In this document: positions 37,458-62,405 of the stretch, piece after piece
Numbering within the stretch: position 1 is the first letter of the stretch
Layout of the letters: each line of letters starts with the position of its first letter
DNA from: Leucoraja ocellata
Lineage: Eukaryota
NCBI GenBank assembly: GCA_036785375.1
Contig: JAWMAR010000578.1
Location: forward strand, 868,001 to 932,000
Length of the DNA: 64,000 nucleotides
Direction of reading: 5' to 3'
Translations under genes and position numbers: made by a program
Notes under the pieces: generated by a model
What the model was told of the DNA's origin: nothing
Databases searched by the model: none
Seen by the model: only the letters and a program-made list of their open reading frames with translations

Positions 37458-37501
37458 CGTTTCTGCACTTCGACTTGATTCCATCGAATTTTTATTAGCA
37501 T
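37458..37501 (-). CDS. Ig receptor gene A, probable cytoplasmic exon
   Basis: Strong acceptor ttgttttctttag|; in frame with the TM exon: (D)ANKNSMESSRSAET|gtaggg. The terminal exon was not resolved. Confidence 0.6.
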
Positions 37502-37969
37502 CTAAAGAAAACAAGACAACAAAATGAATATTGTGTCTTTGAAGATAATTAAATGTATTGGCTAAAGTAAGAACTCCTGATGGCGCCGTTGTATTTGAAA
37601 CCGTTTAGCAATAGCGGTTTTTGCAATCTTGTGTTAGTGTATTAACTTCGCATAGTCGGTAATACGTAATCGAACATGACTTTGAATTAAATTATCAAAT
37701 GGTGATAGCGTGTCAGCAGCTGTGTCGCATTCCAAAATTACAATGAAAATTAAAAGTGTGGCAAGTTAGAGCAGGTTGATCACAAACAAAGTCAAGGTCC
37801 ATATCAAATTTCTTAAGATTCAATATTTTTAAAGAATAAAATGCAATGTATGAACAATTCCTCTTGATTGTGAAATAAAGACGCAGTCGATGAGCGACTA
37901 ATTCGAACTTTGAAAAAAAAATGTTCCAGCACATTTCAATAGTTAACTGTCATAATGTTTTTGTTATGT

Positions 37970-38014
37970 GAATGATGACCTAATGATCACCTAATGATCA
38001 CCTAATGATCACCT
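37970..38014. repeat. 11-bp tandem repeat (TAATGATCACC), about 4 copies
   Basis: Directly visible. Confidence 0.9.
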
Positions 38015-38120
38015 GCAATGTTTCTTCTTCTGCACTCAACATTTATTAATTTACTGTTCCTGTTTTCTGAAATACTGTTAGGATATTAAAGCAATTGGCA
38101 AAAATAAATAACGGTCTTAC

Positions 38121-38219
38121 CATTTGTTGCCTTTATTCTGAGTACTATCAAAATTATAATCGGGATTAAAATTGCCAATACGCCCACTACACATCCGGGA
38201 ATCAGTGCGAGATTAGAGT
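38121..38219 (-). CDS. Ig receptor gene A, transmembrane exon (uncharged)
   Basis: ctcctgcag|(D)SNLALIPGCVVGVLAILIPIIILIVLRIKATN|gtaaga; 99 nt, phase 1/1. Confidence 0.85.
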
Positions 38220-40226
38220 CTGCAGGAGAAGCAGATACATTTAAAACTGTAAAACAGATAAACTAAGAAACTGGTGAGAAATTAGGAGTCAGGAAGGCAG
38301 AGCACTCCGAATGTGTCTTTTTATCCTTGGTGTACAAGCATTCCAATATATACCGAATGGAACGAATTGCATTATTTGCAAGTTAGCGAATAAATATATA
38401 TCGTCTGCTTTGATCTGTCATTTTCAGATCTGACATCTCTTTGTAACCTTCCATATCTCTAGTTTCCCTCTCCACTGACTCTCAGTCTGAAGAGGTGTCT
38501 TGACAGGAAACGTCACCCATTCCTTCTCTTCGATGATGCTGCTTGACCTGCTGTTACACCAGCATTTCATGCCCATTTTCGGTGTAAACCATCATTTGCA
38601 GTTCCTTCCAACACAGATGTATGGTAAACACGTAAACCGTGTCACATAATGATCCAGTGAGCTTCTCTCTGTGCATGAAAGTTACTTATGAAATATAAAG
38701 TGAGACTTGCTTTTTTCTTAGCAGATTCCATATTTTAGGACCGGCATATAGCACCTGATTCTACAGCTTTTAAGGTGTAACAAAAGCAATTTACCTTTAC
38801 ATGCGGGATTGCAAGCCTTTAACGTGTTCAAATATTTCAAGAAACAGGCAGGCCTTCCAACAAGATTTGCCTCCAAATCGCAGATTATGAGAAATTAGGA
38901 GAGTCATAGCACGAAAACCGGTCATTCCGCCACTCACCCATGCCGAGCACGTTGCCCAACCGAGGTAGTCCCAGCTGCCTGCCGTAGGAACCCAACAGGC
39001 TTAGTTGCATTGCTGGAGGGAAATTACGTTTCGAGTAGTGACCCTTCTTCAGATACCCTCCGCACAAGCTACCTGAGATGCTAAGTATCTCCAGAACTTT
39101 GCAGATGCTGGAAACATTTAAAAAGCAATCTCCTTTGCCTCCTACTTACCTGCTCCTGGCACATATCTATTCAAACCGTTCCCGTCCATATGGAGGTGAC
39201 ATGATACTTGGTAGAAATGGTAGAACATTTAAGGTGAGATTATAAGCCAGAAGGGCATGGAGGGGCATAGTGTGGGTAGTTGGTGGCATCATGGGCAGTA
39301 AACGGATAGAATAATTACATTTGAATACAACTAGACGAATACAGTGACATTTCATGTTGGTAAACTTATAAGGACTAGAGAATAAGGCCAGATGACCTCT
39401 CCGGGTGCACGATTGTGGTCGTTCCTCAATTAGAATCCATTTCTTGCCCATTGTTCATACCTTTTGATTTTAAAACACAAATGATCCGGGTAAAACTGAC
39501 AAGGCCAGCACATACAGTATTCCCAATTCATACTTGTCCTTCACAATGTGGCAGTGAGCAGCCTTTGTGAATCACTGCAGTCCTCTCGAAGATAATTCCA
39601 CAGTGTTATTGGGTAGGGAGTTCCAGGATCAAATCCAAGCGACGATACGGCCGATTTATTTACAAGTCATGATGGTTTGTGACTCGGAAGGGAATTTGCA
39701 GGAGATGGCGCGTTCCTATGCACCTGTTGCCCTTGATCATCATTTTCAAAAACTATTGATCTCAGCTCTGAAATACAACATTATGAATCTGTGATGTTCC
39801 GAGGTACGGAATTACAAAGATTCACGCATCTCTGGGAAGTGAAATTTATCGCCTCAATACAAACGTTAAAAGCCGACTTCCTGTCTTAAAGAAAATATGT
39901 CTTGTTCAGAGCATTCTCCTTCCCCATTCGTCATATTATGTCACTTTGTAGTCGCGAGTTGAATGTGTGCTTGCTACACCACTGTCAAGTGCCTGAAAGT
40001 TTGCTGTTTCACACGCACAATATACATTAAACGTATCAATTAATCGTCGCAGTTCTAATTGAGAAAATATAGCGCTAAATGATGCATTAGGTGGCTTGCA
40101 CATCGATATTCTACTGTGAATAAATAGGTTAACATTTACTACTCCACGTACAGTATTCGGCCAGATATAATTTCTAAATCGGATCGGAGGTCTCCCTCTG
40201 TTCCCAGTTCTGTTTGCCAGTCTTAC

Positions 40227-40517
40227 CTGGCTTGACGGTGTAGTCGACTCTGGCGGGGACCGCAAGGGAGACATGTGACACTTTGCAGGTGTAAATATCA
40301 ACGCGCCAGGTAGGCTTTGTTACTTCGAGAAAACTGGAAGCCACATACAACCCCCCCACGCTACTGGTGTTCACAGGTTCCTCCCCGGTGGAAATTGTTA
40401 CACCATTTCTTTGCCAGGATATTTTGACTTCCTTCGGGGAAAAGGCAGCCGTTTGACACACAAGTTTTGGCGGCGAACTGCCATTAACTTGGCTAATGCT
40501 CAGGGGAGTTGGCGGAG
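40227..40517 (-). CDS. Ig receptor gene A, C1-set domain exon
   Basis: (A)PPTPLSISQ...LVCQTAAFSPKEVKISWQRNG...LYVASSFLEV...YTCKVSHVSL; C1 motifs C-x4-F-x-P-x6-W and Y-x-C-x-V-x-H; AG/GT, 291 nt, phase 1/1. Confidence 0.92.
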
Positions 40518-40779
40518 CTGTAACAGAAGGAAAAAAAAGTTATGTTGGATGTCTTCTTTCCATGTCAATGAATACTCTGTCGTACGGCTTGTGAAGACAT
40601 TGCAGTATCATGACCACATGGGTTATCGGTACGTTCACTTTGAAACTCGTGGATTTGTCACTGATTTATAGTTAGTCTTACCATGGACAGTAAAATACAT
40701 TCAAGGAACACATAGGGATGTGATTTTCGATTTAAGTAATATGCGGAGAATGTTGCAAAGAATGATACAGGCCCGGTGT

Positions 40780-41010
40780 CGCCTTCACGCTGACTATTAA
40801 ACTCCTATTAATTTATCCAATTTTCCTGTCGCATCCATATCAACTGTCCTCATTCTTCCCCACCACAATCAATTATCACGGGATAATTTACCGCTGGCTA
40901 CCCTACCAACCAGCGAAAAGTTGGCAATGGGTAAGTTAGCGTAGCAACGGAAGAAAAACCACGAATTTACGAGGAGATTGTTAAACTGCACACAGACTAA
41001 CGAATCCTAA
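40780..41010 (-). mobile_element. Degenerate V-SINE, at the equivalent position to 62860-63090
   Basis: Reverse-complement similarity to the 32255-32572 V-domain. Confidence 0.55.
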
Positions 41011-42675
41011 CGAATCCAGCCCTGTATATATTCACATCTCGCCAATGCATATGGTCGAGGGGCAGGGTTTGGCTACATCTATCGATCTGAGGTTTGGCCC
41101 CATAATAGTTCAAGATACAAGATACAAGGTACATGTAATTGTCACATGTGCCAGACTGGGGTTGAGAGTTCAGATGAAGTAACTTTCACAAGGAAAACCT
41201 TTTCCAGGCCGCGATATACGGTATGATTGTACACGGTATGATTGAGTTATACTGACAATTGGTTGATAATAACAAATAAAGGTGATAGAACGTGAAAGTG
41301 ACTTCCAATGTGGCAACACATTTTATCTATATCTCTGGCCTTTTCTAAATTTGCTCGATATATTGAACGCATTCCATGTAAGTAAGATTCTATTGAACCG
41401 AACTCCATATTTGTCATTTACGAACACTGATCTTTCTCAGTTAAATCTACAGTCAATGTTTAGCTGGAAGGACAGGTGTATTGGGAGTCATTACAAGCAA
41501 TCTGTTGAACACCTAACTTTTAAATGTTCTTACATTCCGTTTTTGTACTAACAAGTTATTGAATCAGGATCATTATTGCCTTCGGGAGAGAGTTCTGTGT
41601 TTATTCTCAACCTCAGCGAGTGCACTACCAGCTAAAACTCAAAGTTTCTCCATGGCACAAAAACAGATTATTTTATGTGGAATAAATATTTGTTGCGATG
41701 TTGAGTGACAGCGCCGTTTTACTTGTAGGCATTTCAACCGAGGGTCGTGTAAATGGAAACCACGATTTGCAAGGACAGGAGCACTAGTGGTTCTTCAAAA
41801 GACCTTTACATTCTGTTCGTGCTTTACAAATATTTGGCGGTTAAATAAAAATGCTCGAATACACAAAAACCGTAACTCAGCGGGACAGGCAGCATCTCTA
41901 GAAAGAAGAATTGGGTGACGTTTCGGGCCGAGACCCTTCTTCAGTTTGAATCATCACTATTAGAGATGCTGCCTGTCCCGCCGAGTAAATTCAGCATTTT
42001 TTGTCTATCTTTAATACATCCAAATCATGAGAGCTCCCTTTATTCACACGTTTCCTGACTTTAAGGATAAAACTAATAGATTTCGGAAAATTAGTTATAA
42101 CAAATACTGGGTAGACAACTTGTAGCGGTTGCGTCAAAAAGAATAAGATTGTGTGTGGACTGTGGGTGGACACAGTTCTGGGGAGGTTGTAGCCACAGTT
42201 GGCCTGGAATGGTGACTTTTCATTATACACAAGAGCAGACCCAGACTCAGTGTGTTAAAATGATTCCCGTGAGGAAAAAGCCGCCATACTTCCCACAGTC
42301 CAGATTAAATATCCAAGTGGCTTGAGCATCTTCACTGAAAAACAATGTGATCACTGAGCACCGTGGGAATGATGAAGAGTGAATCTGAATCGTGGGCGAT
42401 AGCAGCGCGACTACAGAAGGACAAAGGAAAAGGCCCCCTGGAAGCACGAAAAACGAGAACAACCCTCCCTCGCCACACACATGCTGCCCGATCAGCTAAT
42501 TATTTCCAGACATTTCAGATTTCAAGTCAGCAGAGTGGTTTGATTTCATAACAAAAAATACAGTTATTAGTAATCATCCAGTTTTAAGCCAGTGATAAAA
42601 TGTGATGTTATTCACATTAGAGAGCATAATTTATACTATAGAGAGCTTACGTTCTCTCCGTCATGGGATACTTAC

Positions 42676-42981
42676 CAATTACAGTCAGCCTGGAGCCAGG
42701 TCCATCTCCGATAGATTGCTGCTGAACTTTCACTTTACAATAATAAACCCCGGAGTCCGCTATATTTGCATTCAGGAGAACAAAATCCCCAATGCCCTTT
42801 CTGGTAGAAATTATTTTTCTGCTGTCTGGTTCTATAAGTGTCTTCTCTCCCCATCTCCACCAGGAAACATCAGGAGTAACTTGTTGTATTGAGAACGTGC
42901 AGAACATGGACGCATTGCCTCCTCTGTGGACTGTCAGCTCTTTCGGGAATTGGTCCACTTTGGTCGTAGTTACTTCGTTGG
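42676..42981 (-). CDS. Ig receptor gene A, germline-joined VJ-type domain (NCR3/NKp30-like)
   Basis: (A)NEVTTTKVDQFPKELTVHRGGNASMFCTF...VSWW...DSGVYYCKVKVQQQSIGDGPGSRLTVI; J-like GxG-x-x-L-x-V in the same exon; ggcag| and |gtaagt, 306 nt. Confidence 0.92.
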
Positions 42982-43186
42982 CTGCCAGAAATTAAGGAAA
43001 ACACGGAAAACAGTTGCACAAACTGGACAAGGAAAATTAATCAAGAGTTGAAAATTACAAAAGTAAATTAGAATTAGCGACAAGCGAGCTGGAGAAGCAC
43101 TGTAACTAAATTCACAGTGGGCAACTAAATGGAGTATTCTAAAACAGAATTAAATATGATGGACCGGCACATATATCTAAAAGTAC

Positions 43187-43241
43187 CTTGCCAAACTGTC
43201 ACCAGAAGGGCCATGTACCGAAATGATGCTTCCACTGTCAT
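43187..43241 (-). CDS. Ig receptor gene A, leader exon
   Basis: ATG; MTVEASFRYMALLVTVWQ then a phase-1 donor GTACTT, 205 nt upstream of the V acceptor. Confidence 0.75.
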
Positions 43242-44149
43242 ATTATAAGATAGTTGTTGGCCGCTTGTTGCAAATGAGAGGTTTCCTAAAAGATCCTTGC
43301 AAGAAAGAGTTGCTGGTGAATAAATATTTTCCGCTTGTGACCATGACATAGGATGTCACATGACGGTAAAGTGGGTTTCACATTTGGTTCGGTGTTGGTG
43401 GAGTACTAGTGTGAGCGAGGGTCCGCCCCCACTGCCAAGTGAACAGTTTCTATCGGGGTACAATTCTCTCTCAGACTTCCCTGGATCCATGTTCAAATGA
43501 TTGACTGACCATTCAGAAGAGAATCGCAGATTTTCCTCATTCGACGCAAGGGACTTACAATCTAATATGAACTTTAAAAAAAAAATTACAGGGGGAAGGA
43601 AGGAGAATGCGGTTGAGAGCGAAGGGTTAATCAGTCATGATAGGATGGCGGAGAAGACTCGATGGGCTGAATGGTCTAATTCTGCTTTGATTTATGAGCT
43701 TATGAATTTATTTCGTCACCCCACTTCGGGTTTGATGTCTTTCTAATCTCTCTTATGTTCCATGTCCCAGGGCTTGAAGCCCATTGGAAAAACAACAGGA
43801 GTAACTAACCCAGATATGTCTTTCTTTATTTCTTTTGCTTCAACCCAGCCTGATTTTAATTGGAATATAAAGCAAGGAAGGATGAACTGAAATGGACGAT
43901 TAGAAGGACCAAAAGTTGCCACGAGGTGCTTGAAGAAGGGTCCCGAAACGTCACCCATTCCTTGTCTCCAGAGATGCTGCCTGTCCCACTGAATGACTCC
44001 AGTATAAAAGGTGCCACAAAATGGTTTTGGGGAGTCGGTTTACATACAATCCCTTTAAAAAAAATACCTACATTAAAACAAGAGGGTAACGAAGAGAGGG
44101 GAGGGGTCACTCAATGTAAAATAGCAAATTTGTGCATGGAGTCGGGTTG

Positions 44150-46310
44150 AGGCAAAGTACTAAACAGGTACATTGCATCTGTATTGACTGAGGAGAAGGG
44201 CATGGAAGACGGTGAGTTCAGTGTTGAGAATATTAATTTTCAAGGACAGATTTTTGATTAAGATACAGGGGTTTTTAACAAACATTAACGTGGATAAATC
44301 CACAGGGCCTAACGCGATATATTTCTTGAGAGAGGCAAGAGCGGAAATTGCAAGAACCTTGACAAAGATTTTAGCATTTTTTCTGGCTACATGCAATGAT
44401 CTGGAAGACTGCAGAGTAGCTAATGTTGTTCCATTGTTTAAAAAGGGAAATAGAGGGAATTTAACTAATATGGGCCTGGTGCACCACACGTCAATAGTAG
44501 GGAGGCTATTGGATATGATTCATTTGGATAGGATTTATTCCCATTTGGAAGAGAATGGTTTCATTTAGACAGTCAGCATGGCTTTGTACATGACAGGTCA
44601 TTTTTTACTAATGCTCCAGATTTTTTGAAGAAGGAGCAAAGGTGATCCATGACAGTAGAATAATGGATGGCATCTACATAGATTTTAGCGATGCATTTGA
44701 TGTAGGCTGATCCAAAAGATCAGGATCTTGTGTATTAACAGAGGATTAACAATGATTTGATTGTATGGATTCATAAATGGCTTACTAATAGAAGGCAGTG
44801 GGTAGTGGTGGAAGAACAATATTCAGGCTGGAGGTCTGGATGATCTATTGTACATTTTTGTTGTACTCCGTCCCCTTTGATATCTTGTTTTCACACCTTA
44901 CCCATCCATATCTTTGTGTCTCCCTCTCCACTGACTCTCAGTCTGCAGAAGGGTCTCAACCTGAAATGTCACCCATTCCTTCTATCTAGGGTTGCTGCCT
45001 GACCTGCTGATTTACTCCAACATTTTGTGTTTTTCTTTGGTGTAAATCAGCATCTGCAGTTCCTTCCTACACTTAATAATTTCTTTAGCTGAAGGGCAAC
45101 ACACCAGAGGACTGGAGAACAGCCAATATTGTTCCTTTGTTTAAGAAGGAAACTAGAGATGATCAAGGAAATTATAGGACTGGGCCTCACATCAGTGATA
45201 GAACAGCTATTGGAGTGGATTATTTGGGAGAGGCTTTATTTGTGTTTGGAAGAAAATGGGCTAATTAAAGACAGTCAGCGTGGCTTTGTACATGGAAGGC
45301 CATGTATTATGACCCTGATTGGTGTTTTTGAGCAGGAGATGAAGGTGATTGATCTGGGTGGGGCAGTGGATGCTGTCTACGTTTATTTTTGGCTAGACAT
45401 TTGATAAAATCCCTCATGGTAGGTAATCCAAAAGATGAAAGTGTTTGGAATCCAAAGTGATGTGGTTGTTGGAATTCAGAACTGACTTACTCAGAGCAGA
45501 CTGAGTGCTGTGATGGAAGTGAGTTATTTTGGCTGGATGTCTGTGACTAATAAAGTTTCTCAAGGATCTGCACTGGGACCTCTGTCATCAGCAATATATA
45601 AAAATGATTTGCAAATAAATGGGTTGGTTAGTAGTTATCAAATAATACCAAAATTGGGAAACTTGTGGAAAAGAGGTTGGCAGTCAAGTTATATAAGAGG
45701 GATTATAATCAGTTGCAGAAATGGATGGAGAAATGGCAGAATGAGTCTGCAAGTGTGGTGCACTTTGGGAGGTCAAATGTAAGGGGAAAGTATACACTCA
45801 ATAGAAAGTACCTCAGCAGCATCGCTATACAGCGAGCTCTCGGGCACCTTGTTCACAGCTCCCTGATAGATAGATATGCCATTTATTGTCACTATACATG
45901 TATAGTGAAATTGAAAGCTGCTCGTACTCAGTGCATGCATATAATTTAGTACAAAAAACAAGAAACAGAAAAACAAAACAGAAGGGATAAGGGGGGGGGG
46001 GGGGGGGGGAATAGGTGCTCAATTCTGCGGCGCTATATACATATATACATATATACAGATGGAAGTCCGGGTGTTGGGCTGTGAAGTCAGTGCATGTGTG
46101 AATTTGAATTAAGAGTAGTTATAATTTTCGGAAAGATAAAGATAAAGTAATAAAGAAAGCATCTGATATGCTTGCTTGCATCAATCAGAGCATTGAATAG
46201 AAAAGTCAGGAAATCGCGTTTAATTCAACTTGGCACCATGTTCGGCATGGACATCAGGCATGGGTTCAGGGCCTGTTCCTGTGCTGTACTTTTCTATGTT
46301 CTAATATGTT
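44150..46310 (+). mobile_element. Two successive CR1 ORF2 remnants interrupted by a Penelope-type repeat
   Basis: EDCRVANVVPLFKKGNR; LIKDSQRGFVHGRPCIMTLI; VSQGSALGPL. Confidence 0.8.
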
Positions 46311-46614
46311 GCTATTAATTCAAATGTATTCCGTTTTTTGCAATAAATTTGCAAAATCAAGATTTGCCGAAAAGTCTTCTCTACCAGATTAGTTGACCCA
46401 AATTAGGAAGAAATAATCCTTCAATGGTGCCACTCACACTGCCACCCAACATGGCCTGCTCAATGATTTGGTAACTGCAGGACGGAGATAGATTGTCAGT
46501 CACTTCCGGATTTCAGGTACCTCCGGTTGCTTTGCAAATCAATGAATATAACGAGCTGCCAAGAGAATTGGCAGAAACGGGTATCATTATGACAATTAAA
46601 TAAAACCCGGTAGT

Positions 46615-46960
46615 TCATAAGGTCATAAGTGATGGGAGTAGAATTATGCCACTCAATCTTGGCTGATCTATCTCTCCCTCCAATCCCCATTCTCCTGTGT
46701 TTTCCCTATAACTGTCACCTGTACTAATCAAAAATCTATCCATCTCTGCTTTAAAAATATCCACTGGTTTGGCCCCTACAACCTTTTGTAGCAAAGAAAT
46801 CCACAGATTCACCAGCCTCTGACTAAAAAATAATACCCTCATCTCCTTCCTAAAAGAATGTCCTTTCATTCTGAGTCTGTGACCTCTAGTCCCAGACTCT
46901 TCCACTAGTGGATACGTCCTCTCCACATCCACGCTATCCAACTTTCTCTATTCTGTACGT
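46615..46960 (-). mobile_element. CR1 LINE 3' end
   Basis: MDSVDVERTYPLVEESGTRGHRLRMKG...FFSQRLVNLWISL. Confidence 0.85.
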
Positions 46961-47278
46961 TCCATTAACTGAGCTCATCAATCTGCCATTTTTTGCAAAC
47001 GTTTTTCCATTTACTTTGTGATTCTTAATATCATCAAAACCAGAATGAAATATTTGGTTGTATTTACTTAATATGAGGAGATGGATTACGAAACATGGAT
47101 GATTTGCCAGTCCCACTTGCCAGCACCTGTTTCATGTCCCAAAAAAATATTTCCTCTCACTGTACCTGGCTGTCCTTTAACTGACTAAATTATGTCTGCC
47201 TCAGCAACCTCCTCCCACAGCTCTTACAAGTATGCACCACGCTTTGTGTGGCCCTCAGGTTCCATTAACTCTTTTCCA

Positions 47279-51340: not shown

Positions 51341-52046
51341 CCTGACTCTTGATTCTGTCAAAAATATGAACGTTTTGTCTTATTCAGGGGAAGATGTAGA
51401 TTTGGCTTTTTTTCCATTTTGTTTTATTACCCTATCTGGATGCGAAGCTTTGTAAACTTGTTAATTCAACCCTCTACTGTTTACAGTAATGACAACATGT
51501 TCGATGACAATAAAGTGCTCTGGGACCAAAAGTAGATTTAAAACACATGTTCCCTCGTGTTTCACTAGTTGTTTTCTTTGTTAAGCAGCTCATCTCTTCT
51601 TGCAAGCATATTAACCGACAAATTATTTCAGATTTGTTTTCAGCTGAAATTACATCAGTGTTTCGAAATGCCCCTCTCTTGTCATAACCGATAATACAGG
51701 GGAATGTCAGGATATTTATCCAATTATCAATTTTATAATGATTGCCAATGAAACAATAAGTGGTTTGTCCTTCTACGTTGCAATAGAAAGATTGGCAACT
51801 TTAAAACTTGTTTTGAATTGATATCAAGATAATTGTTTCGTATTTCTTTTTTCCAGAATGTACACGGCGCGCAATTACCAGACATAAAACTCGCAGAGCA
51901 AATATTTTGGTATCAGAAACAGGGTCTCAAATAAATTACTCAAATTAGACTTCTTCCACTTCAGCGTCAAATTGGATACCGCAAGCAGTTTGCAACTTCA
52001 GATCATCGTACACTTTGACCACAGCGAGTTTCCATGATGTCACCAG

Positions 52047-52155
52047 CAGATTCAAGGTGCATTATTCTTATGGGTTACTTACTCTTAGTTCGAGCTATGA
52101 ATGTATTTATGGGGGTTCATTGGCTATATCATCTTTTTATAGAGAAGTTGCAAAT
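52047..52155 (+). pseudogene. Possible NKp30-like Arg-containing TM exon relic
   Basis: ccag|(A)DSRCIILMGYLLLVRAMNVFMG...|gtgcgt; followed by a strong acceptor tttccttccag at ~52291. Confidence 0.35.
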
Positions 52156-52559
52156 GTGCGTGCTCTGGCTACAGCGAATTACAGACAGAAAGCTGAAGTT
52201 TGAAGAAAGGTCTCGACACGAAACGTCGCCTACACATCTGATCCACAGAGTTACTCCAGCACTGTTAATCTTTTTTTAAATTTCCTTCCAGAGGACGTAC
52301 CCTTTCCAATCGCAATGGAACAAGAAGCAAAAAAAGACATTTACAAAGGACGAGAATAAATTGAAAAGAAGGCTGATAAGCACGCACGCATGTACAGATT
52401 TAGATACACATACACACATTTATTTAAACGCATACGTTTTACTGCGATGTTTTCTCAGAAAACGCCAACTTTCATTGATACAACATCTTCAAACCATTTA
52501 AAGAAAATACACAGAACGTGCTTTACGGGAAGATAAAGGTCTTGCAAAGTGAGTTTAGG

Positions 52560-54150
52560 GAGTTCCACAAATGTTTTAAAAAAATTACTTCATGAGTCCC
52601 TATCTCAGGATTCCTGCGTGGGATCTGTATAGAAAACATTGATTGATCTAAACTGGAAGGGAACGAAGATCAGAGAAGAGAGGATTATTCAAGCTACTTA
52701 GAAGTGTTTAAACGAACTTGGGAAGGGAGAAGGTCGGTGGAAGCATGGAACCAGTGCAACAACTGGGGTGAAATTTGTGCAGGACAAATCAAGCAAGTCC
52801 CAAGGGCAGAGTAGAGGGTGGCAGGTTCGCAAGCCGAGGAGGCTTAGCAGGCTCAACAGCATTTACTTTAATGCAAGGTGTCTCACTGACAAGTCAGTTG
52901 ACATTAGAGCATGTGTCAGAACTTGGAATGATGACTTTACTGCAATCACATAGTTGAGGGAAGAGGGAAGGACAAGACTGGCAACTTAATGTTCCAAGTT
53001 ATACAACCTTCAGGTGTGAGAAAGAGTACTGCAGAAGAGCAGGGGGGTACGTTTGCATTGCCTGTTAGGCAGAAAATAATTAACCCTTTGGAAGGGTATC
53101 CTGGAGGGTTCATCCAATGAGGCCTTATGGATCGAATTTGGGAAAAAGAGAGGAACGATCACTTTGCCAAAGTTATAAGATAGACTTCCCAGTAGTCAGG
53201 AAAAATGACTGGAACAGGTATGTAAGCAAGCCGCCAAAGTTTGTTATAGTGGGCATTTTTATATGCTCAATCTTAACTGGATTGTCCTGATTGTCACGGG
53301 TTTAGATGGAGAGAAATTTGTTAAGTTTGTACCACACATTTTGAGAGCCAATATATTATTGGTCCTGTCAGATATGAGTCAGTACGATGCTCGACATTAT
53401 CAGGAAAGCACTGGGTAGGTGGTGGAAATGTTGGTGGAGCGAGACTTTTAGAACAGTGAAAATTCAGAAATGTTCAAGTTATTTATGCAAAGGGATCAGG
53501 CTGTTCCTTAAATTTGAGAAAGGCTTGTTTCAATAGCATAACTAGAAATTGATGAATGTAGACTGGGCACAGATGCTTGTGGGTAAAACTGACAAGTGGA
53601 AGTCTTTTAAGGGACAATTAACCAGACTTCAGATTCAGCAAGTTCCAATTAAGGTGAAAGGAAAGATGGCAAGGCAGGAGATACATGTGGCCCAGGCAGA
53701 GGTTTCAGTACCTTCATTCTTCAAAGGTGACATGCCAAAACAGGGAAGGATAACTACTATTCTTTCACTTAAGAAGAGCACCAAAGATATGCCAAGTAAT
53801 TACAACTGTTGTGCCTTACTTCATTAATGAGGGAAATTAATGAGGAAGGTCTTAAGAGATATGATTTATGTAAATTTGATAATTCAGGTATTTATTAGGG
53901 ATAGTCAGTAGATCTTTGTGCGGGGGTAAATCCTGCCTCACTAATTTGATTGAGCTTTATGAGGCAACTACTAAACAGATTCATCAAGGCGGGATTGTAG
54001 GCATTTTTTTGACGTTTGACATGGTTTCACATCGCAGGCTGGTTCAGAAGATTAAGACATACTGGATACACCTTACATCGTTGGCTAATTGCATCTAAAA
54101 TTGGCATGGTGAAAGTAGACAGTGGTAGTGGTGGAAAGCTACATTTCTGA
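52560..54150 (+). mobile_element. CR1 ORF2 5' part (APE endonuclease to RT), degenerate
   Basis: SIYFNARCLTDK...IRACVRTWNDDFTAIT (APE N-terminus); GKSCLTNLIELYE (RT). Confidence 0.8.
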
Positions 54151-56231
54151 CTGCCTTGGAAATTAATTCCACACAACCATGGAAATAAAACTGTCTCTCA
54201 TTTCTCCTTTCAATTTATCCTGTGTCAGCTTAAACAATGCTCTTTAATTCCAGACTCTCCTGGTGAAGGAAAATGACTGACTATTGTCCTATTTATGCTT
54301 CTGATCAAATTATAAATCATGATGTGGTGTGATCAGAACTGTACATTGTACACCAAAGGCGCACATAAACAGCACATGCTTACTCACATGTTTCAGTGCT
54401 TTATGCTCCCACTGTCTTCCAGGCAAAACCTATCTGCATTTTATGTTTTTCCTTCCATGTTCTTGTTCATGACACTCGGTGGAGCATATTTATTATTTAC
54501 GTGGATACATTTAGCTCTAAAAAATACTCAAGAAGCACAACATTATTCAGGATAAAGAAACCCTTCTCATTGGTACCGATTCACCAACATAAAATAAATA
54601 GTCTCCATTACTGTTGCATCATAGCTGCAGTGGACCACGTTGATGGAAATATATTGCAATTCCTTCAGCTACTTCCTATCCAGGAGTGGTGATCTTTCAC
54701 TTGAAGGGGAAATCATGGAAGATGACCTACCAATTTTACACCGTAATTAAATAATTCCTCAGTTACAGTTGCTTAGTTAGGTTGCAGTTGCTCAAGACAT
54801 TAGTGAGGCCACATTTGGAATATTGTCTTCAGTTTTCGTCATCCTATTGTAGGGAATGTTATTGGTGCAGAGACGATTTACGAGGATGTTGCCAGAAGTA
54901 GACTGGGGAGATTGAGCAGGTTAGAACTTTATTCCTTGGAGCGCAGGAGAATGAGGAGTGATCTTATACAGATATATGATCATGAAGGGAATAGATAGGG
55001 TAAACGTCTACTCTGTCAAACCTTAAAACTTCTATTAGGCCACTCAATTACATTGTTTATCCATACAGACCAGCCCGAATCAATGTTTTATTTCTGGATA
55101 AGAATTGCCTCATTTTGTACACTGTACTGCAGTTCAATCCACTTACCTTATTCTTTTCTGCTTTTCAATTCTGAGTAAAAATGAACGGTGCCATGTTCTT
55201 TTTATATGGCCCCGTTAATCTCTCTTCATAGATTTGTGTATTAATGCTCCCAAACATCTTACTCATCCAATAACTGGGTATTATTTGGTGTTTATCTTTC
55301 CAGGAGTGTGGGCAACATCAACGAATCCAGCATTTATTGTCCGTACCACGTTGCCCTGAGAAGATGGACATTATCCACAGGCTTGAATTACTGCATTCCT
55401 TCATGTGAATGAACTCCCCCAATGCAATTGGGAAGGAAGCACTCAGATTTAGAAGTAAACCTGATGATGAAAAACAGCATATTTTTAAGTTAGGATGGTT
55501 GCCAGACCCTGATGCCATGGTGCAGATTAGGTTGGTAGATGGGAAACTGATCAAGGATGGTGTTGAACTTCTTCAATGTTTTTGGAGTTTGATTTATCCA
55601 GGCAAGTAGGTTAAGCTTTGGCATGCTCTTAGATTGTGGATAGGCTGTCAGGAGGAGAGTCATTTCAAATTGCCTGAGCAATTTATGTATTCTTTTAAAA
55701 AGTACCGCCTCATACCTATCTAAATCAAAAACTAATTAGTTATTAAATGGTCATTCTTGTAAGTGTATTTAATTCCTGAATTTTACTTCATTTACCTTTA
55801 GATTTAAACAAATCTGACATTGAGAACTACAAACATTTTGTTGCATTTGATTATGGCTTGTTTATGTTTTCAATTTCCATCCAATTTCATTTAATTTGCA
55901 GTTGAAAAGGTCAACATCAAGGGATTCTATTACAAAAGTGATGCCAATGCATAACATGGTTAAGTTACAACTTATCTGTTACATCATTGTCATAAATTCA
56001 GACAAACTGATAGAGCATATTTAATAAAGACTCAATATCTTTAAAACCGATTAATTGCTCAAAACTATATTCTAAGAATTAATTTCTTGCCGATATCATT
56101 TTGTGGAAGAAATTTAAAATTTAGAATGAGTTAAATCTGGCATAAAATTAGATCTAATAAACACCAGTGAATAATAGATTACACCCTTTGAACTTGAAAA
56201 AAATTTCAGGCATAACTCTTTTCACTCAAGA

Positions 56232-57348
56232 TCATAGAGTATAGAAGTTGGGATGTAATGTTAAAATTGTACAAGGCATTGGTGAGGCCAATTCTGGAGT
56301 ATGGTGTACAATTTTGGTCGCCTAGTTTTAGGAAGGATGTCAACAAAATAGAGAGAGTACAGAGGAGATTTACTAGAATGTTGCCTAGGTTTCAGCAACT
56401 AAGTTACAGAGAAAGGTTGAACAAGTTAGGGCTTTATTCTTTGGAGCGCAGAAGGTTAAGGGGGGACGATAGAGGTCTTTAAAATGATGAGAGGGATAGA
56501 CAGAGTTGACGTGGATAAGCTTTTCCCACTGAGAGTAGGGAAGATTCAAACAAGGGGGCATGACTTGAGAATTAAGGGACAGAAGTTTAGGGGTAACATG
56601 AGGGGGAACTTCTTTATTCAGAGAGTGGTGGCTGTGTGGAATGAGCTTCCAGTGAAGGTGGTGGAGGCAGGTTCGTTTTTATCATTTAAAAATAAATTGG
56701 ATAGTTATATGGATGGGAAAGGAATGGAGGGTTATAGTCTGAGCACAAGTATATGGGACTAGGGGAGAATACGTGTTCAGCCGGACTAGAAGGGTCGAGA
56801 TGGCCTGTTTCTGTGCTGTAATTGTTATATGGTTATATATAGACAGTTTATTTTTTCTACTCTCGTAGTTTATTTCATGCCACATTTGAAGTTTATGCCA
56901 GTTTTGCATTTATATATCTTTCTGGAAGAAAGGGACTGAAAAAAATATACAAATTCAAATAGATGCAAACTAATAGCTTACAAAATTCTTAAGAGGTTGG
57001 ACAGGCTAGATGCAGGAAGATTGTTCCCGATGTTGGGGAAGTCCAGAACAAGAGGTCACAGTTTAAGGATAAGGGGGAAATCTTTTAGGACCGAGATGAG
57101 AAAAACATTTTTTCACACAGAGTGGTGAATCTCTGGAATTCTCTGCCACAGAAGGTATTTGAGGCCAGTTCATTGGCTATATTTAAGAGGGAGTTAGATG
57201 TGGCCCTTGTGGCTAAAGGGATCAGGGGGTATGGAGAGAAGGCAGGTACAGGATACTGAGTTGGATGATCAGTCATGATCATATTGAATGGCAGTGCAGG
57301 CTCGAAGGGTCGAATGGCCTACTCCTGCACCTATTTTCTATGTTTCTA
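56232..57348 (+). mobile_element. Two young CR1 3' fragments (56232-56840 and 56976-57348)
   Basis: MLKLYKALVRPILEYGVQFWSP...LGLYSLERRRLRGD; near-identical copies at 23666 and 12935. Confidence 0.92.
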
Positions 57349-58865
57349 ATAGTTACCAGTATCTTTATATCAGATCTAATTTCGCATATTGATAAAAAAA
57401 TTAATTGACAACGATTTGTCCGGAATTAACTTGTCCAATATATGTTTTGAGCAGTGGATTAAGTTTATAACCTTTGCTTCCTTTGTGAAATATTCTGCAC
57501 TGATTAATTTGGATTCAACATTTGTGGTTATCAGGCAGGCGGGTTGCAGACATCGGAGTCATGGTGACTTAACTCATCAGCCTCAGGCATGCTGAGGTTA
57601 TGGAATGATGGGAGAGCGCAATATTCAGGTGCTGGAGGCACCGCCCAGATGGAAGAAGGACATGATGCTAAATTGCAGAACGGATTGACAAAGTCTGTAG
57701 TACTTCGATGAAGCCACAAGGTGGAGCCCGCCCCTCGCGCAATGTAAAGAGGCTCTCTATGGCAGATGGAAGCGATTTTCTTTCTGATGAAGGATACAGA
57801 GGAGCTGGACATCAATTCGGACTTGGGATCTGGCCTTTCAACAACAACACCAGGATGCATAATTTTATTCAGATCTTTGTAAAATCAAGACTCGCCTCCC
57901 TGAACAAAGCTGGAATTACTCGGCCAAATGCAGCTTTTAAGACTGAGACGGTGGTCCGGTTTTGAGTAAATAGTGCAATTTTCAGTATAATACGCTTAGA
58001 TTCAGTCAGCCGTTTCTAGCACGATCTGTTAAAGAAACAAAACATTTAAAGTTTATATCAACTGAATTATTGTGATAAGTCCCCTAGCGTTCTTACCCGT
58101 TTCTATCACATACCCGGAGGTCTTTCCATGTTCCTCTCTGTTCATTGTTTGCTCTGATGTCTCGACCAATCGGTCAACCTTTACCACGGAGCCTAGACAG
58201 GAAGACAAATTAATTGGGTACTATAGTGCAGATTTGGCGATCGTGAGTTATTTTGAATGTTGACATATTTTCTTACACCACTCTTATTATGAGCCGACAA
58301 GACATCTAACGGGCGCCGATTCCCTATTGCCCAATTTGTGCTCCCGACTAAAATCGATTTGTCGCCTTTGTCTCCAGATGGGTTCGAGGTCAAGGCGAGA
58401 GAGTCACCACTAAATGATACTTTGAATAATTATCTGAACATCAGTTTTGAAGACATTCCCGACGCTTCATCTTACAGGGATCAGCCGCGGCTGGGCTCCA
58501 CCCTTCAGAAGCAAAAACAATGGGATGGGGACCAATTCGGGCAGATGCAGAAATCACAACATTCAGCGGAGTCCCGACTGACCACAAAAATGAAAGAAGG
58601 AACGGTAATCGTGCCGACAACTTTTAAATCAAAGGATTGGGAAATAATCAATTTATCCAACATGCATTGGCCCAAGATAAACAGTTGCACAAAGCTGTAA
58701 CTTGAGGAAGGAAACCGCTCCAAGTGGCGACATCTAAATTACAACCGCTCTCATCTTCCAATTCTGCATGTGGCGTTTCAGCAGTGGAACAATTATTTTA
58801 TAACAGTTCGATTAGAAGACGGTATTGTATTCCTTGATATTAACGATGATTAACAATTTATTTTT

Positions 58866-58966
58866 TTAAGCTCTTTCAATGCCCTCTTTTGTTTTTGGAT
58901 TTTTACAAGTGAATTTGGAACACTGGTGATAGCGGAGACTTGACGGAATTGTTGTCCTCTGTGAGT
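58866..58966 (-). CDS. Ig receptor gene B, candidate terminal cytoplasmic exon
   Basis: ttctccatccccag|(D)SQRTTIPSSLRYHQCSKFTCKNPKTKEGIERA-TAA, with AATAAA immediately after. Alternative: the TM exon reads through to AKGE-TGA. Confidence 0.4.
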
Positions 58967-59128
58967 CTGGGGATGGAGAACTGATATAATTCTGTACCGT
59001 TTGGGGATCACGATCTTGTTATTAACAATGTGGCCAAATAGCATCAATTCACGTAGCGTCATTTGATTCTCCGCAGCACCATTTTACAGGGAATTTGAAG
59101 ATTAACTCTAGAATGAAGCTTCATTCAC

Positions 59129-59227
59129 CTTTGGCAGAGCTTGATCCAAAAACAATTCTCAAAGTAGCCAACACCAGTAGAATGATCAATGTACCTCCTA
59201 AATTGCGAAGGACAACGCTGGCCGAAC
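59129..59227 (-). CDS. Ig receptor gene B, transmembrane exon with Arg residues
   Basis: tttttacgtctgcag|(G)SASVVLRNLGGTLIILLVLATLRIVFGSSSAK|gtgaat; 99 nt, phase 1/1, same length and relative position as the gene A TM exon. Confidence 0.75.
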
Positions 59228-59639
59228 CTGCAGACGTAAAAAGTAATTGAGCAATAAGACAATTATCACAAGTGAATGAACAAACTATAGAATTGTATTT
59301 GTGTAAAGAGCTTTATCAAGTGTCACTGTACTACAAAAAATATCCAAATAAAATAGCAATATTAGGCAAATGGACACTGTACAAAATAAACGGGAGATCT
59401 TGCTTCCAATATGAACAATATTGTTATTGCATTATATGTCAACGAGTGATACATTTCCAAGTCAAGCTAGTGTGCAATTTGGAAGGCAGCCTGCAGGCCG
59501 TGGTGTTCACATGCACCTGTTGCCCTTGTCATTGTTGGTGATCCAACCTGTCCAGAAATCTATAAATGTCAATCCTCACTTTTCAAACATCTGCAACGCT
59601 TCGAGGTAGGGAATTACAAAGATTCACTCATCTCTGAGA

Positions 59640-61790
59640 AGAGTCATACAGTCACAGAATGATACAGTGTGGAAACAGGCCCTTCGGCCCAACTCGCCTA
59701 CACCGGCCAACAATGTCCCTGCTAACCTAGTCCCACTTGCCTGTGCTTGGTCCATAACCCTCCAAACATTTCATATCCATGTACCTGTCCAACTGTTTCT
59801 TAAACGATGGGATAGTCCCAACCTCCTCTGGCAGCTTGTTACATACACCCTCCACCCTCTGTGTGAAAATGTTACCCCTCGGATTCCTATTAAATCTTTT
59901 CCCCTTCACCTTGAACCTATGTCCTCTGGTCCTCGATTCCCCTACTCTGGGTAGAATCTGCGCATCTACCCGATCTATTCCCCTCATAATTGTGTACACT
60001 TCTATAAGATCTCCCCTCATCCTCCAACGCTCCATGGAATAGAGACCCAGCCTACTTAACGTCTCCCTATAGCTCACACACTCTCTAGACCTGGCAACAT
60101 CATCGTAAATCTTTTCTGAACCATTTCAAGATTGACAATATCTTTCCTATAACATGGTGCCCAGAACTGAACACTATATTCTAAATGTGGTCTCAGCAAC
60201 GTCTTATACCACTGCAACATGACCTACCAACGTCTATACTCAATACTCTGAATGATGAAGGCCAAAGTGCCAAAAGCCGTTTTGACCACCTGCGATTCGA
60301 CCTTCAAGGAACCATGCACTTGTACTCCTAGACCCCTCTGCTCTACACCACTAGCATTTACTGTTTAGGTCATGCCCTTGTTCGACTTCCCAAAATGCAA
60401 CACCTTAAACTTCTCTGTATTAAATTCCATCAACCATTCCTCTGCCCACGTGGCCAAGCGACCCAGTTCCTGCTGCAATCGTTCATAACCATCTTCACTA
60501 TCTGCAAAACCACTAACTTTTGTATCATCAGCAATCTTGCTAATCTTGCCCTGTTTGTTTTCATCCAAATCATTGATGTAGATGCCAAACAGTAACGGGC
60601 CCAGCACCGAACCCTGTGGCACACCACTAGTCACTGGCCTCCATTCTGAGAAGCAATCTTCCACTAACATTCTATTTTCTTCCATGGAGCTAATTTACTA
60701 TCCATTCAGCTATCTCTCCTTAGATCCCACGAGATCTAACCTTCCAAAACAGCCAACCATGCGGCACCTTGTCGAATGCCTTATTAAAATCCATGCACAC
60801 AACATCTACCCCTCTGCCATCATCAACCTTTTTGCCCACGTTTTCAAAAACAATCAATCAGATTGTGAGACACGACGTCCCACGTACAAAACCATGCTGA
60901 CTGTCCCTAATCAGCCCATGCCCATCCAAATGCATGTATAACCTATCCCTCAGAATACTCTACAGTAACTTATCAACTACAAATGTTAAGCTCTCCAGCC
61001 TATAGTTCCCAGCATTTTCCCTGCAGTCCTTCTTGAAAAGAGGCACAACATTTGCCACCCACCAATCCTCTGGCACCTCTCCTGTATTTAAGGACGACAT
61101 ACATTTAATCCAGGGCCTCCGCAATTTCCTCCCTTGTTTCCCGCAATGTCCTCTGATATATCCGACCAGGCCCCAGAGATTTGACTACCTTCAAACACGA
61201 CAGTACCTTTAGTACTTCCTCGACAGTACTTCCTCGATGCTCTCATGACACTTCCAGTAACTGCTCCAATTTCCTCCATCCTACTGTTTTCTCCTTGGTA
61301 AATGCAGAGGAGAAATACTCTTTGAGGACCTTACCCATCTCCTGTAGCTCCACACAGAGGTGACCGCTTTTATTCCTGAGAGGTCCCACTTTCTCTCTGG
61401 TTATCCTTTGCCCCCTTATGTTTTTACAAAATCTTTTCGGATTGTCTTTTATGGTACCCGCCAGAGCTATCTCCTGGCCAATTTTTGCCCTTCTGATCTC
61501 CTTTTTTAGTTTGCTCCTTATTTCCCAAAACTCCTCCAGTGATGCACTTATCCCAACTGCCTTTACCTGTCCCATGCACCCTTCTTGTTTTTGACTAACG
61601 TCTCAATTTCCCTCGTCAGCCAAGCTTCTTTACGTTTGCCTGCTTTGCCTTTCACTCTAACGGAGACGTACACACCCTGAGCTCTCTACAGCATACGTTT
61701 AAAACATCCCACTTGGCCGATGTTCCCTCCCCATCAAATAACCTGCCCCAGTCAAGTTGAGCTAGACCTTCTCTCATACCCTCAAAATAG
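59640..61790 (-). mobile_element. ~2.1-kb CR1 LINE in the gene B C1-TM intron
   Basis: SEWRPVTSGVPQGSVLGPLLFGIYINDLDE...IADDTKV; IKDNPKRFCKNIRG; intact 3' end at ~59640. Confidence 0.92.
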
Positions 61791-62114
61791 TGAAATATCT
61801 CAACATTGCAAAGTTATTTCCCGACTATATATAAAGAACGTGTACCTCTATCCCCATCTCACTGATTGTGTCTTTTTGATTATTTTTTGTTTGCTAACAC
61901 CTCTGACAGCCTTGAAGGTTTAGCCACGTCACAGACACTATAAATATTGAAGATGCAGATATAATTTAGAAAACAGATGAGAGCATATGATACGTCAGTT
62001 TGCCCGAACTCCCGCGGCGAATAAACACGGTCCACATTCAGCCCGTCTAGTCGTGTTTGAGCTGTATCCATCAATATTTCTAAATCTGTTCCCAGCTCTA
62101 TTTGCCAGTCTTAC

Positions 62115-62405
62115 CTGGCTTGACGGTGTAGTCGACTTTGGCCGGGACCGCAAGGGAGACATGTGACACTAGGCAGGTGTAAATATCAACGCGCCAGGTA
62201 GGCTTTGTTACTTGGAGAAAGCTGGAAGCCACATACAACTCCTCCACGCTACTGATGTTCACACGTTCTTCCCCGGTGGAAATTGTTACACCGTTTCTTT
62301 GCCAGGATATTTTGACTTCCTTCGGGGAAAAGGCAGCCGTTTTACACACAAGTCTGGGCGGCGAACTGCCATTAACTTGGCTAATGCTCAGGGGAGTTGG
62401 CGGAG
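62115..62405 (-). CDS. Ig receptor gene B, C1-set domain exon (V and leader expected beyond the window)
   Basis: 291 nt with the same splice sites as 40227-40517; 15 nt differences counted by eye. Confidence 0.92.

What the first reader, a model, noticed from the sequence alone, without database searches (positions are those of the whole stretch)
37458..62405. Candidate paired receptor system of non-rearranging antigen-receptor-like VJ-C1 genes
Seen: gene A is leader - VJ - C1 - neutral TM - cytoplasmic exon, all in compatible phase. Gene B has an almost identical C1 exon but a TM containing Arg (VVLRNLGG...TLRIV) and at most a ~33-aa tail. Established: TM Arg/Lys marks receptors that signal through ITAM adaptors (NKp30 with CD3zeta/FcRgamma), and similar ectodomains with opposite TM/tail types define paired receptor families (KIR, SIRP, LILR). 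Mammalian NKp30 has only a V domain, and C1 domains are largely confined to Ig, TCR, MHC, tapasin, SIRP and B7-H6. Inference: this is an elasmobranch paired NK-type receptor cluster whose V(J)-C1-TM layout mimics a TCR chain without rearrangement, close to the proposed pre-RAG antigen-receptor ancestor. Whether it has been described already cannot be determined here.
Basis: partly seen in the sequence, partly recalled or inferred. Interest (0 to 1): 0.9.

Follow-up and report, generated by a model that had tools for sequence, protein, structure and literature searches.

The report
Shark SIRP-like VJ-C1 receptor gene pair
Two neighbouring genes of a cartilaginous-fish family of non-rearranging V-C1 immune receptors that look most like mammalian SIRP proteins; one gene is complete, and the "activating" partner proposed for it remains unproven.

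Summary
The exons are real. Gene A (minus strand) is a complete leader-VJ-C1-TM-tail gene. Gene B has an intact C1 exon, 276 of 291 bases identical to gene A's.

Relatives occur in sharks, rays and a chimaera. Their public names are automatic (SIRP-alpha-like, NCR3-ligand-like, tapasin-like and others).

A profile of the family aligns end to end with a rodent SIRP-alpha (probability 99.4%, E 4.7e-21), including all four tail tyrosine motifs. NKp30 matches gene A's V exon only weakly (E 0.012). I therefore read this as a two-domain SIRP-like family, not an NKp30 cluster.

The family holds ITIM-tailed forms and short-tailed forms with a charged TM. One catshark pair has ectodomains 93% identical, so "paired" holds for the family.

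For this locus it is not shown. Gene B's Arg-bearing TM exon has the right phase, size and splice sites. It matches no family TM profile, and four RNA runs gave no reads.

Other windows of this genome carry notes on the same family; none was followed up. The shark NCR3 paper (Kinlein 2021) could not be read.

The parts
43187..43241 (-). Gene A leader exon (ATG at 43241; 18 codons plus 1 base; split leader)
   Evidence: Read from DNA. GT donor confirmed. tblastn hits to the N-termini of relatives such as P0162 and P0151 are weak, E 0.03-0.3.
42676..42981 (-). Gene A germline-joined VJ exon (306 nt, phase 1-1; Cys-Cys spacing 54; ends in a GxGxxLxV J-like strand)
   Evidence: Pfam I-set 7.4e-9 and V-set 6.7e-8. 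31-61% identical to 18 relatives in alignment A1. No RSS. AG/GT.
40227..40517 (-). Gene A C1-set exon (291 nt, phase 1-1)
   Evidence: Pfam C1-set 2.2e-14. PDB hits to Ig constant domains and UrIg2. AG/GT.
38121..38219 (-). Gene A transmembrane exon (99 nt, phase 1-1; no charged residue in the hydrophobic core; RIK stop-transfer)
   Evidence: Top hit of three family TM HMMs among 2178 six-frame pieces: E 3.1e-8, 1.7e-7 and 6e-9.
37458..37501 (-). Gene A small cytoplasmic exon (44 nt, phase 1 to 0). Model only.
   Evidence: AG/GT and phase. Resembles by eye the juxtamembrane stretch of relatives. No statistical or RNA support.
30566..30691 (-). Gene A last exon (41 codons plus stop) with two tyrosine motifs (PTYAAL, PVYADI).
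   Evidence: tblastn E 7.8e-8 to P0027. Tail HMM E 5.2e-12, next piece 3.6. Aligns to the last two tyrosine motifs of SIRP-alpha P0198. AG acceptor, TAA stop.
62115..62405 (-). Gene B C1-set exon (291 nt, phase 1-1, intact)
   Evidence: Pfam C1-set 3.5e-13. 276 of 291 nt identical to gene A's exon, against 155 of 236 aligned columns in the adjoining intron. No RNA reads in four runs.
59129..59227 (-). Gene B candidate TM exon with two Arg (99 nt, phase 1-1). Unproven.
   Evidence: The only candidate with a good acceptor and donor in the 19 kb downstream of gene B's C1. Not significant against any family TM HMM. Zero RNA depth.

Best explanation
The region holds two tandem minus-strand members of a multigene family of non-rearranging VJ-C1-TM receptors found across cartilaginous fishes. 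The closest characterised relatives are the SIRP paired receptors (SIRP-alpha, beta, gamma).

Gene A is a complete six-exon gene of 306 codons by exon arithmetic. It has a split leader, a short germline-joined VJ domain, one C1 domain, an uncharged TM, and a short tail. The tail keeps the last two of the four SIRP-type tyrosine motifs.

By analogy with SIRP-alpha, gene A's product would bind a cell-surface ligand through the V domain. After tyrosine phosphorylation it would recruit SH2 phosphatases and damp the cell's response. This function is inferred. Both of gene A's motifs have Pro at position -2, not the usual Ile/Val/Leu/Ser/Thr, so the signalling may be weakened or changed.

Gene B is a duplicate. 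The window holds its intact C1 exon and a possible 99-nt Arg-bearing TM exon. If that exon is used, gene B would be a short-tailed partner signalling through an ITAM adaptor, as SIRP-beta does with DAP12. That step is a hypothesis.
For: EXONS AND DOMAINS.

FAMILY: the search with gene A's V exon gave 409 proteins at E<=1e-3. Among the best 150 listed, a series of single-stretch hits were 35-60% identical to the V exon. The 33 fetched, plus hits, are mostly leader-VJ-C1-TM-tail models from 18 cartilaginous-fish species.

SIRP LINK
- hhalign of a 21-protein family profile against a rodent SIRP-alpha: probability 99.4%, E 4.7e-21, 337 columns. The alignment is colinear from V through C1 and TM to the C-terminus, with all four tyrosine motifs aligned.
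- Human SIRP-alpha ectodomain 2wng is rank 10 in the PDB profile search (E 6.9e-28, V plus C1 colinear).
- A Bos mutus SIRP-beta-1-like protein is among the best 150 hits of gene A's V exon.
- Gene A's last exon aligns to the SIRP-alpha tail (42% over 33 residues).

GENE A PARTS: the TM exon and last exon are the single significant hits of the family TM and tail HMMs in the window.

PAIRED FORMS IN THE FAMILY: of 94 proteins classed, 36 have a TM plus a tail with tyrosine motifs. Eight have an R...(D/N)H TM with a short tail. P0167 and P0176 also belong to that class but the rule missed them. Catshark P0165 and P0166 share 202 of 218 ectodomain residues yet carry different TM and tail types.

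GENE B: its C1 exon is far better conserved than the intron. Its TM candidate is the only well-signalled one in 19 kb.
Against: - No transcript evidence. Four bulk RNA runs of unknown tissue, 5-25% of each read, gave zero depth on gene B's C1 and TM candidate.
- Gene B's TM candidate is not similar to any TM class of the family (E 3.1 to 140).
- No tail exon for gene B was found in the window.
- SIRP-alpha has three Ig domains; this family has two.
- Gene A has only two of the four tyrosine motifs, both with Pro at -2.
- Orthology to SIRP, as opposed to a shared older origin or tail-exon shuffling, was not tested by a tree or by synteny.
- Ig, UrIg2 and SIRP ectodomains score in the same range.
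- dN/dS between the two C1 exons is 0.63 on only 15 changes. That is weak evidence of constraint.
Confidence: 0.7

Rival explanations
1. The genes are members of the shark NCR3 (NKp30) family. In this reading they are NK-type receptors whose ligands are B7H6-like molecules, and gene B signals like NKp30 through a TM Arg.
For: The V domain is a single-exon VJ type, as stated for NCR3 (passages of PMC12227049). NKp30 is a weak PDB hit of gene A's V (3pv6_B, E 0.012). Other first-reader notes on this genome speak of an NKp30-like V signature followed by C1 (unchecked). The paper on eight divergent shark NCR3 subtypes (Kinlein 2021) could not be read, so that family could be this one under another name.
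Against: The NKp30 match covers only the F-G/J part of the domain. NKp30 is not among the 60 rows listed in the V-profile search. None of the source names I saw was NCR3 itself. The tail and overall layout align with SIRP-alpha. Passages of PMC10751288 list NKp30 among VJ genes and call UrIg the novel VJ-C1 gene, which suggests that shark NCR3 was not seen as VJ-C1. MHC linkage could not be tested.
Confidence: 0.15
2. Gene B is a truncated or dead duplicate, or encodes only a secreted or other form. The Arg-bearing 99-nt frame is a chance open frame, so this locus holds no activating partner.
For: No similarity of the frame to any family TM class. Zero reads on gene B's exons in four RNA runs. 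Homology between the A and B introns stops about 220 bases upstream of the frame. A transposon-derived block fills 59601-61800 of the intron. No tail exon was found. TM-like open frames are fairly common in this AT-rich DNA: 30 phase-compatible ones in the window on both strands.
Against: After splice-signal filters only 3 loci remain in 128 kb. They are gene A's true TM exon, this frame and one other, so about 0.02-0.15 would be expected by chance in 3-19 kb. The frame is exactly 99 nt like gene A's TM exon, in the same phase, and is the first candidate after the C1 exon. Gene B's C1 exon is intact and 95% identical to gene A's while the intron is about 66% identical. TM types in this family are diverse.
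Confidence: 0.35
3. The genes are relics of the non-rearranging antigen-receptor lineage (UrIg/UrIg2-like), closer to Ig/TCR than to any innate receptor family.
For: UrIg2 (9dmx) is rank 2 in the family-profile PDB search (E 1e-34) and scores 9.9e-18 with the C1 exon alone. The genes have a split leader, a single VJ exon and a C1 domain, as described for UrIg2.
Against: UrIg2 has four domains in that PDB entry, so its summed score is inflated. UrIg has three C domains and is secreted, and UrIg2 has nine C domains. This family has one C1, a TM and a SIRP-type tail.
Confidence: 0.07

Closest known systems
SIRP family (SIRP-alpha/PTPNS1, SIRP-beta, SIRP-gamma) of mammals
   Same: N-terminal V domain with a J-like last strand, followed by a C1-set domain, a single TM, and a tail with four tyrosine motifs in the same order (family profile against rodent SIRP-alpha: probability 99.4%). 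The family has inhibitory forms and short-tailed forms with charged TMs and near-identical ectodomains. That matches SIRP-alpha (ITIM) against SIRP-beta (DAP12), as in passages of PMC3716694.
   Different: One C1 domain, not two. A short V (Cys-Cys spacing 54). The commonest charged-TM class carries Arg near the outer end and Asp/Asn-His near the inner end, unlike SIRP-beta's single basic residue (that detail is recalled). Many copies per genome. Gene A keeps only the last two tyrosine motifs, with Pro at -2. Ligand unknown.
NKp30 / NCR3, including the shark NCR3 family of Kinlein et al. 2021 (paper not readable here)
   Same: Non-rearranging single-exon VJ domain. A possible TM Arg in gene B. 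Multigene in cold-blooded vertebrates (recalled from the abstract of Flajnik 2012).
   Different: Mammalian NKp30 has no C domain (recalled). Specific sequence similarity is weak (E 0.012). The tail here is of SIRP type.
UrIg and UrIg2 of elasmobranchs (PMC12227049)
   Same: Split leader, germline VJ exon, C1-type domains, confined to cartilaginous fish. High PDB score to 9dmx.
   Different: UrIg is secreted with three C domains. UrIg2 has nine C domains. Neither is described with ITIM-type tails or paired forms.
Ig light chains and TCR chains
   Same: V-J-C1 order of domains, and C1 similarity.
   Different: No RSS and no separate J segment. Has a tyrosine-motif tail.

Membership tests
SIRP family | N-terminal V-set domain with a germline J-like G strand | tested here: met
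   The V aligns with SIRP-alpha domain 1 in hhalign.
SIRP family | C1-set domain(s) after the V; mammalian SIRPs have two | tested here: inconclusive
   One C1-set domain is present. In hhalign it is matched by the start of SIRP-alpha domain 2 and the end of domain 3. The three-domain layout is therefore not met, but the domain type is.
SIRP family | Cytoplasmic tail with four tyrosine motifs in SIRP-alpha order | tested here: inconclusive
   Met for the family profile. Gene A has only the last two, both with Pro at -2. No other tail exon is in the window.
SIRP family | Paired partner with similar ectodomain, basic TM residue and short tail | tested here: inconclusive
   Met in relatives. For gene B the TM exon is unproven.
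SIRP family | Orthology by tree and by synteny with the SIRP locus | not tested
SIRP family | Binding of CD47, recruitment of SHP-1/2, association with DAP12 | not testable with these tools
   Needs bench work.
NCR3 / NKp30 | V domain specifically similar to NKp30 | tested here: not met
   3pv6_B matches at E 0.012 over residues 78-109 only. It is not in the 60 rows listed with profile A1. This tests the human protein only.
NCR3 / NKp30 | Ectodomain of a single V domain (mammals; recalled) | tested here: not met
   A C1 exon follows the V exon.
NCR3 / NKp30 | MHC linkage; B7H6 as ligand | not testable with these tools
   The window holds only repeats beside the two genes. Notes on other pieces of the genome do not give linkage.
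UrIg / UrIg2 | VJ followed by three or more C domains | tested here: not met
   One C1 exon, then a TM exon.
Rearranging antigen receptors | RSS-flanked V and J segments | tested here: not met
   V through J lies in one exon, and no heptamer or nonamer occurs in 42500-43100.

The most novel reading that the evidence does not exclude
The family may be an undescribed, very old two-domain branch of the SIRP lineage. It is present from chimaeras to rays, with the four-tyrosine tail kept since before cartilaginous and bony vertebrates split. It also has its own class of partner chains whose TM carries both an Arg and an Asp/Asn-His. That would put a SIRP-type VJ-C1 paired receptor system at the base of jawed vertebrates, beside UrIg and NCR3, as a third non-rearranging relative of antigen receptors. 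In this locus gene B would be a further Arg/Arg TM variant.
Probability: 0.3. Interest if true: 0.6.

Novelty: new member of a known kind. Interest (0 to 1): 0.4.

Why it matters
Non-rearranging VJ-C1 genes bear on how antigen receptors arose. If the SIRP link holds, SIRP-type paired receptors with a four-tyrosine tail existed in the common ancestor of jawed vertebrates and expanded greatly in cartilaginous fish. Public annotation of these genes is a mix of misleading automatic names, so a correct family assignment would help comparative immunology. The locus itself is one of many copies in this genome. Its proposed activating partner is unproven, which limits its own weight.

Tried and rejected
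- A second V exon in the window: none. The weak tblastn hit at 25048-24971 lies inside a reverse-transcriptase frame.
- Further tail exons between 37458 and 30691, and a last exon of the kind seen in short-tailed relatives downstream of gene B: none.
- A remnant of gene B's TM frame in gene A's intron: none. A/B homology ends at A 39653 / B 59448.
- My by-eye match of gene B's TM frame to Arg-bearing TMs of ray proteins (P0118, P0207, P0211): rejected as evidence after the HMM tests.
- Teleost V-only proteins P0149 and P0150 as a bridge to NKp30: their best PDB hits are titin, antibodies and TCR, not NKp30.
- Atlas search with a homologue's V: only generic Ig clusters.
- Rfam on 30000-64000: no family at gathering score.
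- Poly(A) signals after both genes: present but uninformative.
- Literature. The two that combined SIRP terms with cartilaginous-fish terms listed no relevant paper on SIRP-like genes of cartilaginous fish. One search ranked poorly: none of its 15 listed papers holds 'SIRP'. The PRARP search returned only unrelated uses of the word. Supplements were not opened. The supplementary files of PMC10751288 and PMC12227049 may list these genes.
Full report
WHAT IS IN THE SEQUENCE

The window has no N runs. Both genes lie on the minus strand.

Gene A was read from the DNA and every boundary has canonical AG and GT:
- leader, 43241-43187: 18 codons plus one base
- VJ exon, 42981-42676: 306 nt
- C1 exon, 40517-40227: 291 nt
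- TM exon, 38219-38121: 99 nt
- small cytoplasmic exon, 37501-37458: 44 nt

All Ig-domain exons and the TM exon are in phase 1-1.

Pfam gives I-set 7.4e-9 and V-set 6.7e-8 for the V piece, and C1-set 2.2e-14 for the C1 piece. The V exon runs from the first Cys through YYC into a GxGxxLxV strand and then a splice donor. No RSS heptamer or nonamer occurs in 42500-43100, so it is a germline-joined VJ exon. Its Cys-Cys spacing is 54, as another note on this window says.

Gene B's C1 exon is 62405-62115 (C1-set 3.5e-13). The window holds one V exon and two C1 exons only. The rest of 1-30500 is largely repeat-derived frames, such as the integrase-like ones at 12263-13960.

GENE A RUNS FURTHER THAN REPORTED

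tblastn of 59 family proteins against the window found a last exon at 30691-30566 (E 7.8e-8 to P0027; sequence). It encodes two tyrosine motifs, PTYAAL and PVYADI, and a stop codon.

An HMM built from the last 105 residues of 26 relatives hits this piece at E 5.2e-12. The next of 2178 six-frame pieces scores 3.6. The 44-nt exon ends in phase 0 and the last exon starts in phase 0, so the six exons give 306 codons by arithmetic.

No exon for the first two tyrosine motifs of relatives was found between 37458 and 30691. The 44-nt exon rests on splice signals and phase only.

THE FAMILY

A search of 1.84 billion representative proteins with gene A's V exon gave 409 proteins at E<=1e-3 (85 at 1e-10, 6 at 1e-30). 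The top scores are giant multi-Ig proteins matched many times over. Below them come single-stretch hits that are 35-60% identical.

I fetched 33 of the 150 listed. I then ran word-indexed searches with three of them: 31, 18 and 34 hits. Most hits are leader-VJ-C1-TM-tail gene models. They come from Heterodontus, Scyliorhinus (two species), Heptranchias, Mobula (two species), Narcine, Pristis, Hypanus, Hemitrygon, Chiloscyllium (two species), Stegostoma, Hemiscyllium, Rhincodon, Cetorhinus, Mustelus and the chimaera Callorhinchus.

The source names are automatic and inconsistent. They include SIRP-alpha-like (PTPNS1-like), SIRP-beta-1-like, NCR3 ligand 1-like, tapasin-related-like, Ig lambda-like, TCR beta-like, MHC class II-like, PD-L1-like and uncharacterized. 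None that I saw is named NCR3.

Gene A's V is at most 61 of 99 residues identical to any fetched relative, and its C1 at most 53 of 93.

WHAT IT IS MOST LIKE

- Profile against SIRP-alpha. A 21-protein full-length alignment (A2) compared with a rodent SIRP-alpha (P0198) gives probability 99.4%, E 4.7e-21 and 337 aligned columns. The alignment is colinear. It covers the V domain, the C1 domain (bridging SIRP-alpha domains 2 and 3), the TM, and the whole tail to the C-terminus, with all four tyrosine motifs aligned.
- PDB, full-length profile. Rank 1 is an IgA1 heavy-chain entry and rank 2 is UrIg2 (E 1e-34). Human SIRP-alpha ectodomain 2wng is rank 10 (E 6.9e-28, V plus C1). Light chains follow at about 1e-24 to 1e-25. 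Chains with more domains gain by summed scores.
- Pairwise BLAST. It shows the same colinear matches. Gene A's last exon aligns to the SIRP-alpha tail at 42% over 33 residues.
- V exon hits. A Bos mutus SIRP-beta-1-like protein is among the best 150.
- NKp30. By contrast, 3pv6_B matches gene A's V piece only over residues 78-109, at E 0.012. It is not among the 60 rows listed with the V profile A1.

I therefore file the family as SIRP-like, with one C1 domain where mammals have two. This is similarity, not a tested orthology.

PAIRED FORMS

I classed 94 fetched proteins by rule:
- 36 have a TM and a tail of 60 or more residues with at least one [ILVST]xYxx[ILV] motif.
- 8 have a TM with Arg near its outer end and Asp/Asn-His near its inner end, and a short tail. 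P0167 and P0176 belong to this class but fell outside the rule's window.
- 31 have a TM with a short or other tail. Several of these look like truncated models.
- 13 have no TM.
- 6 lack the C1 motif.

Catshark P0165 and P0166 share 202 of 218 ectodomain residues but have different TM and tail types. So the family does behave as a paired-receptor family. This rests on gene models, not on experiments.

GENE A IN THIS SCHEME

Its TM exon is the single significant hit in the window for three TM HMMs built from relatives (E 3.1e-8, 1.7e-7 and 6e-9), and its last exon for the tail HMM. It belongs to the uncharged-TM, tyrosine-tailed class. Both of its motifs have Pro at -2, where relatives have Leu, Thr, Ala or Val. 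An inhibitory function is therefore inferred, not shown.

GENE B

Evidence for a live gene:
- The two C1 exons are 276 of 291 nt identical, while the adjoining intron is 155 of 236 aligned columns identical. This fits selection or recent conversion. dN/dS is 0.63 on 15 changes.
- Collinear intron homology is A 41514-41692 with B 63668-63846, and A 39839-39653 with B 59641-59448.
- About 220 bases further on lies the 99-nt frame 59227-59129, in phase 1-1, with a pyrimidine-rich acceptor and an AAG|GTGAAT donor.
- I listed all phase-compatible AG...GT open frames of 75-135 nt that contain a hydrophobic 19-mer. There are 30 in the window on both strands. After splice-signal filters three loci remain: gene A's TM exon, this frame and one other. 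This frame is the only filtered one in the 19 kb downstream of gene B's C1.

Evidence against the TM exon:
- The frame ranks 9th (E 3.1) against the R...(D/N)H class HMM. It ranks 41st (E 29), 246th (E 140) and 152nd (E 60) against three other TM HMMs.
- No tail exon for gene B is in the window. If the donor is not used, the frame stops two codons later.

RNA

One run search offered raw-read RNA runs with the same species label. I laid four bulk runs (X12, X15, X16, X19; 5-25% of each read) on 57001-63000. Depth was zero on 59001-59600 and on 62201-62600, and 0.09 in one strand column of one run in 62001-62200. Reads piled up only on the repeats at 57001-57400 and 59601-61800.

LITERATURE

- PMC12227049: I read the outline and sections 4, 7 and 13, plus passages. 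It describes UrIg and UrIg2 as the non-rearranging VJ-C1 genes of elasmobranchs and uses NCR3 as a VJ outgroup.
- PMC10751288 (passages): lists NKp30 and PRARP as VJ genes and calls UrIg the novel VJ-C1 gene.
- PMC3716694 (passages): states the SIRP paired-receptor scheme and a putative relation to primitive antigen receptors. Its reference list carries Hatherley 2009, 'a link to antigen receptor evolution'.
- Not held: Kinlein 2021 on shark NCR3, Flajnik 2012, Flajnik 2023 and Ohta & Flajnik 2015. What I say of them is recalled from abstracts or taken from citing passages.
- Searches combining SIRP with shark terms listed no relevant paper.
- Supplements were not opened.

VERDICT

The family is SIRP-like rather than NKp30-like, and gene models for it already sit in public databases under automatic names. 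The 'paired' idea holds for the family. At this locus it rests on an unproven exon. The same family was noted in several other windows of this genome, with none followed up.

Noticed in passing
window 59601-61800 and 57001-57400: Transposon-derived blocks in and below gene B's C1-TM intron draw thousands of RNA reads on both strands, most at 95-99% likeness. They are transcribed repeats from many copies, not this locus. Reverse-transcriptase-like frames lie at 60365-60685 and 59727-60077.
   Followed up: partly
window 41860-42010: Another note calls this a minimal hammerhead-ribozyme core in a high-copy short repeat, inside gene A's V-C1 intron. The repeat recurs at several places in the window. 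Rfam gave no family at gathering score in 30000-64000.
   Followed up: partly
relatives P0022, P0153, P0166, P0167, P0176, P0104, P0159, P0189, P0191, P0087: A conserved TM class with Arg near the outer end and Asp/Asn-His near the inner end, in catsharks, Heptranchias, a bamboo shark and one protein of unchecked source (P0087). A TM with two opposite charges is unusual for adaptor-coupled receptors.
   Followed up: partly
relatives P0164, P0160, P0182, P0214, P0223, P0225: Some gene models lack a TM. They pass from C1 straight to a short end or to the tail, which suggests secreted or alternatively spliced forms, or model errors.
   Followed up: no
hits P0010, P0040, P0069, P0086, P0093: Turtle, gecko and viper proteins with several tandem domains match the whole of gene A's V, including the J-like strand. 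They carry unrelated automatic names such as NCAM2, FCRL5-like and obscurin-like. They may be a reptile family of VJ-type repeats.
   Followed up: no
window 12263-13960: Integrase-like open frames of an LTR retroelement on the minus strand.
   Followed up: no
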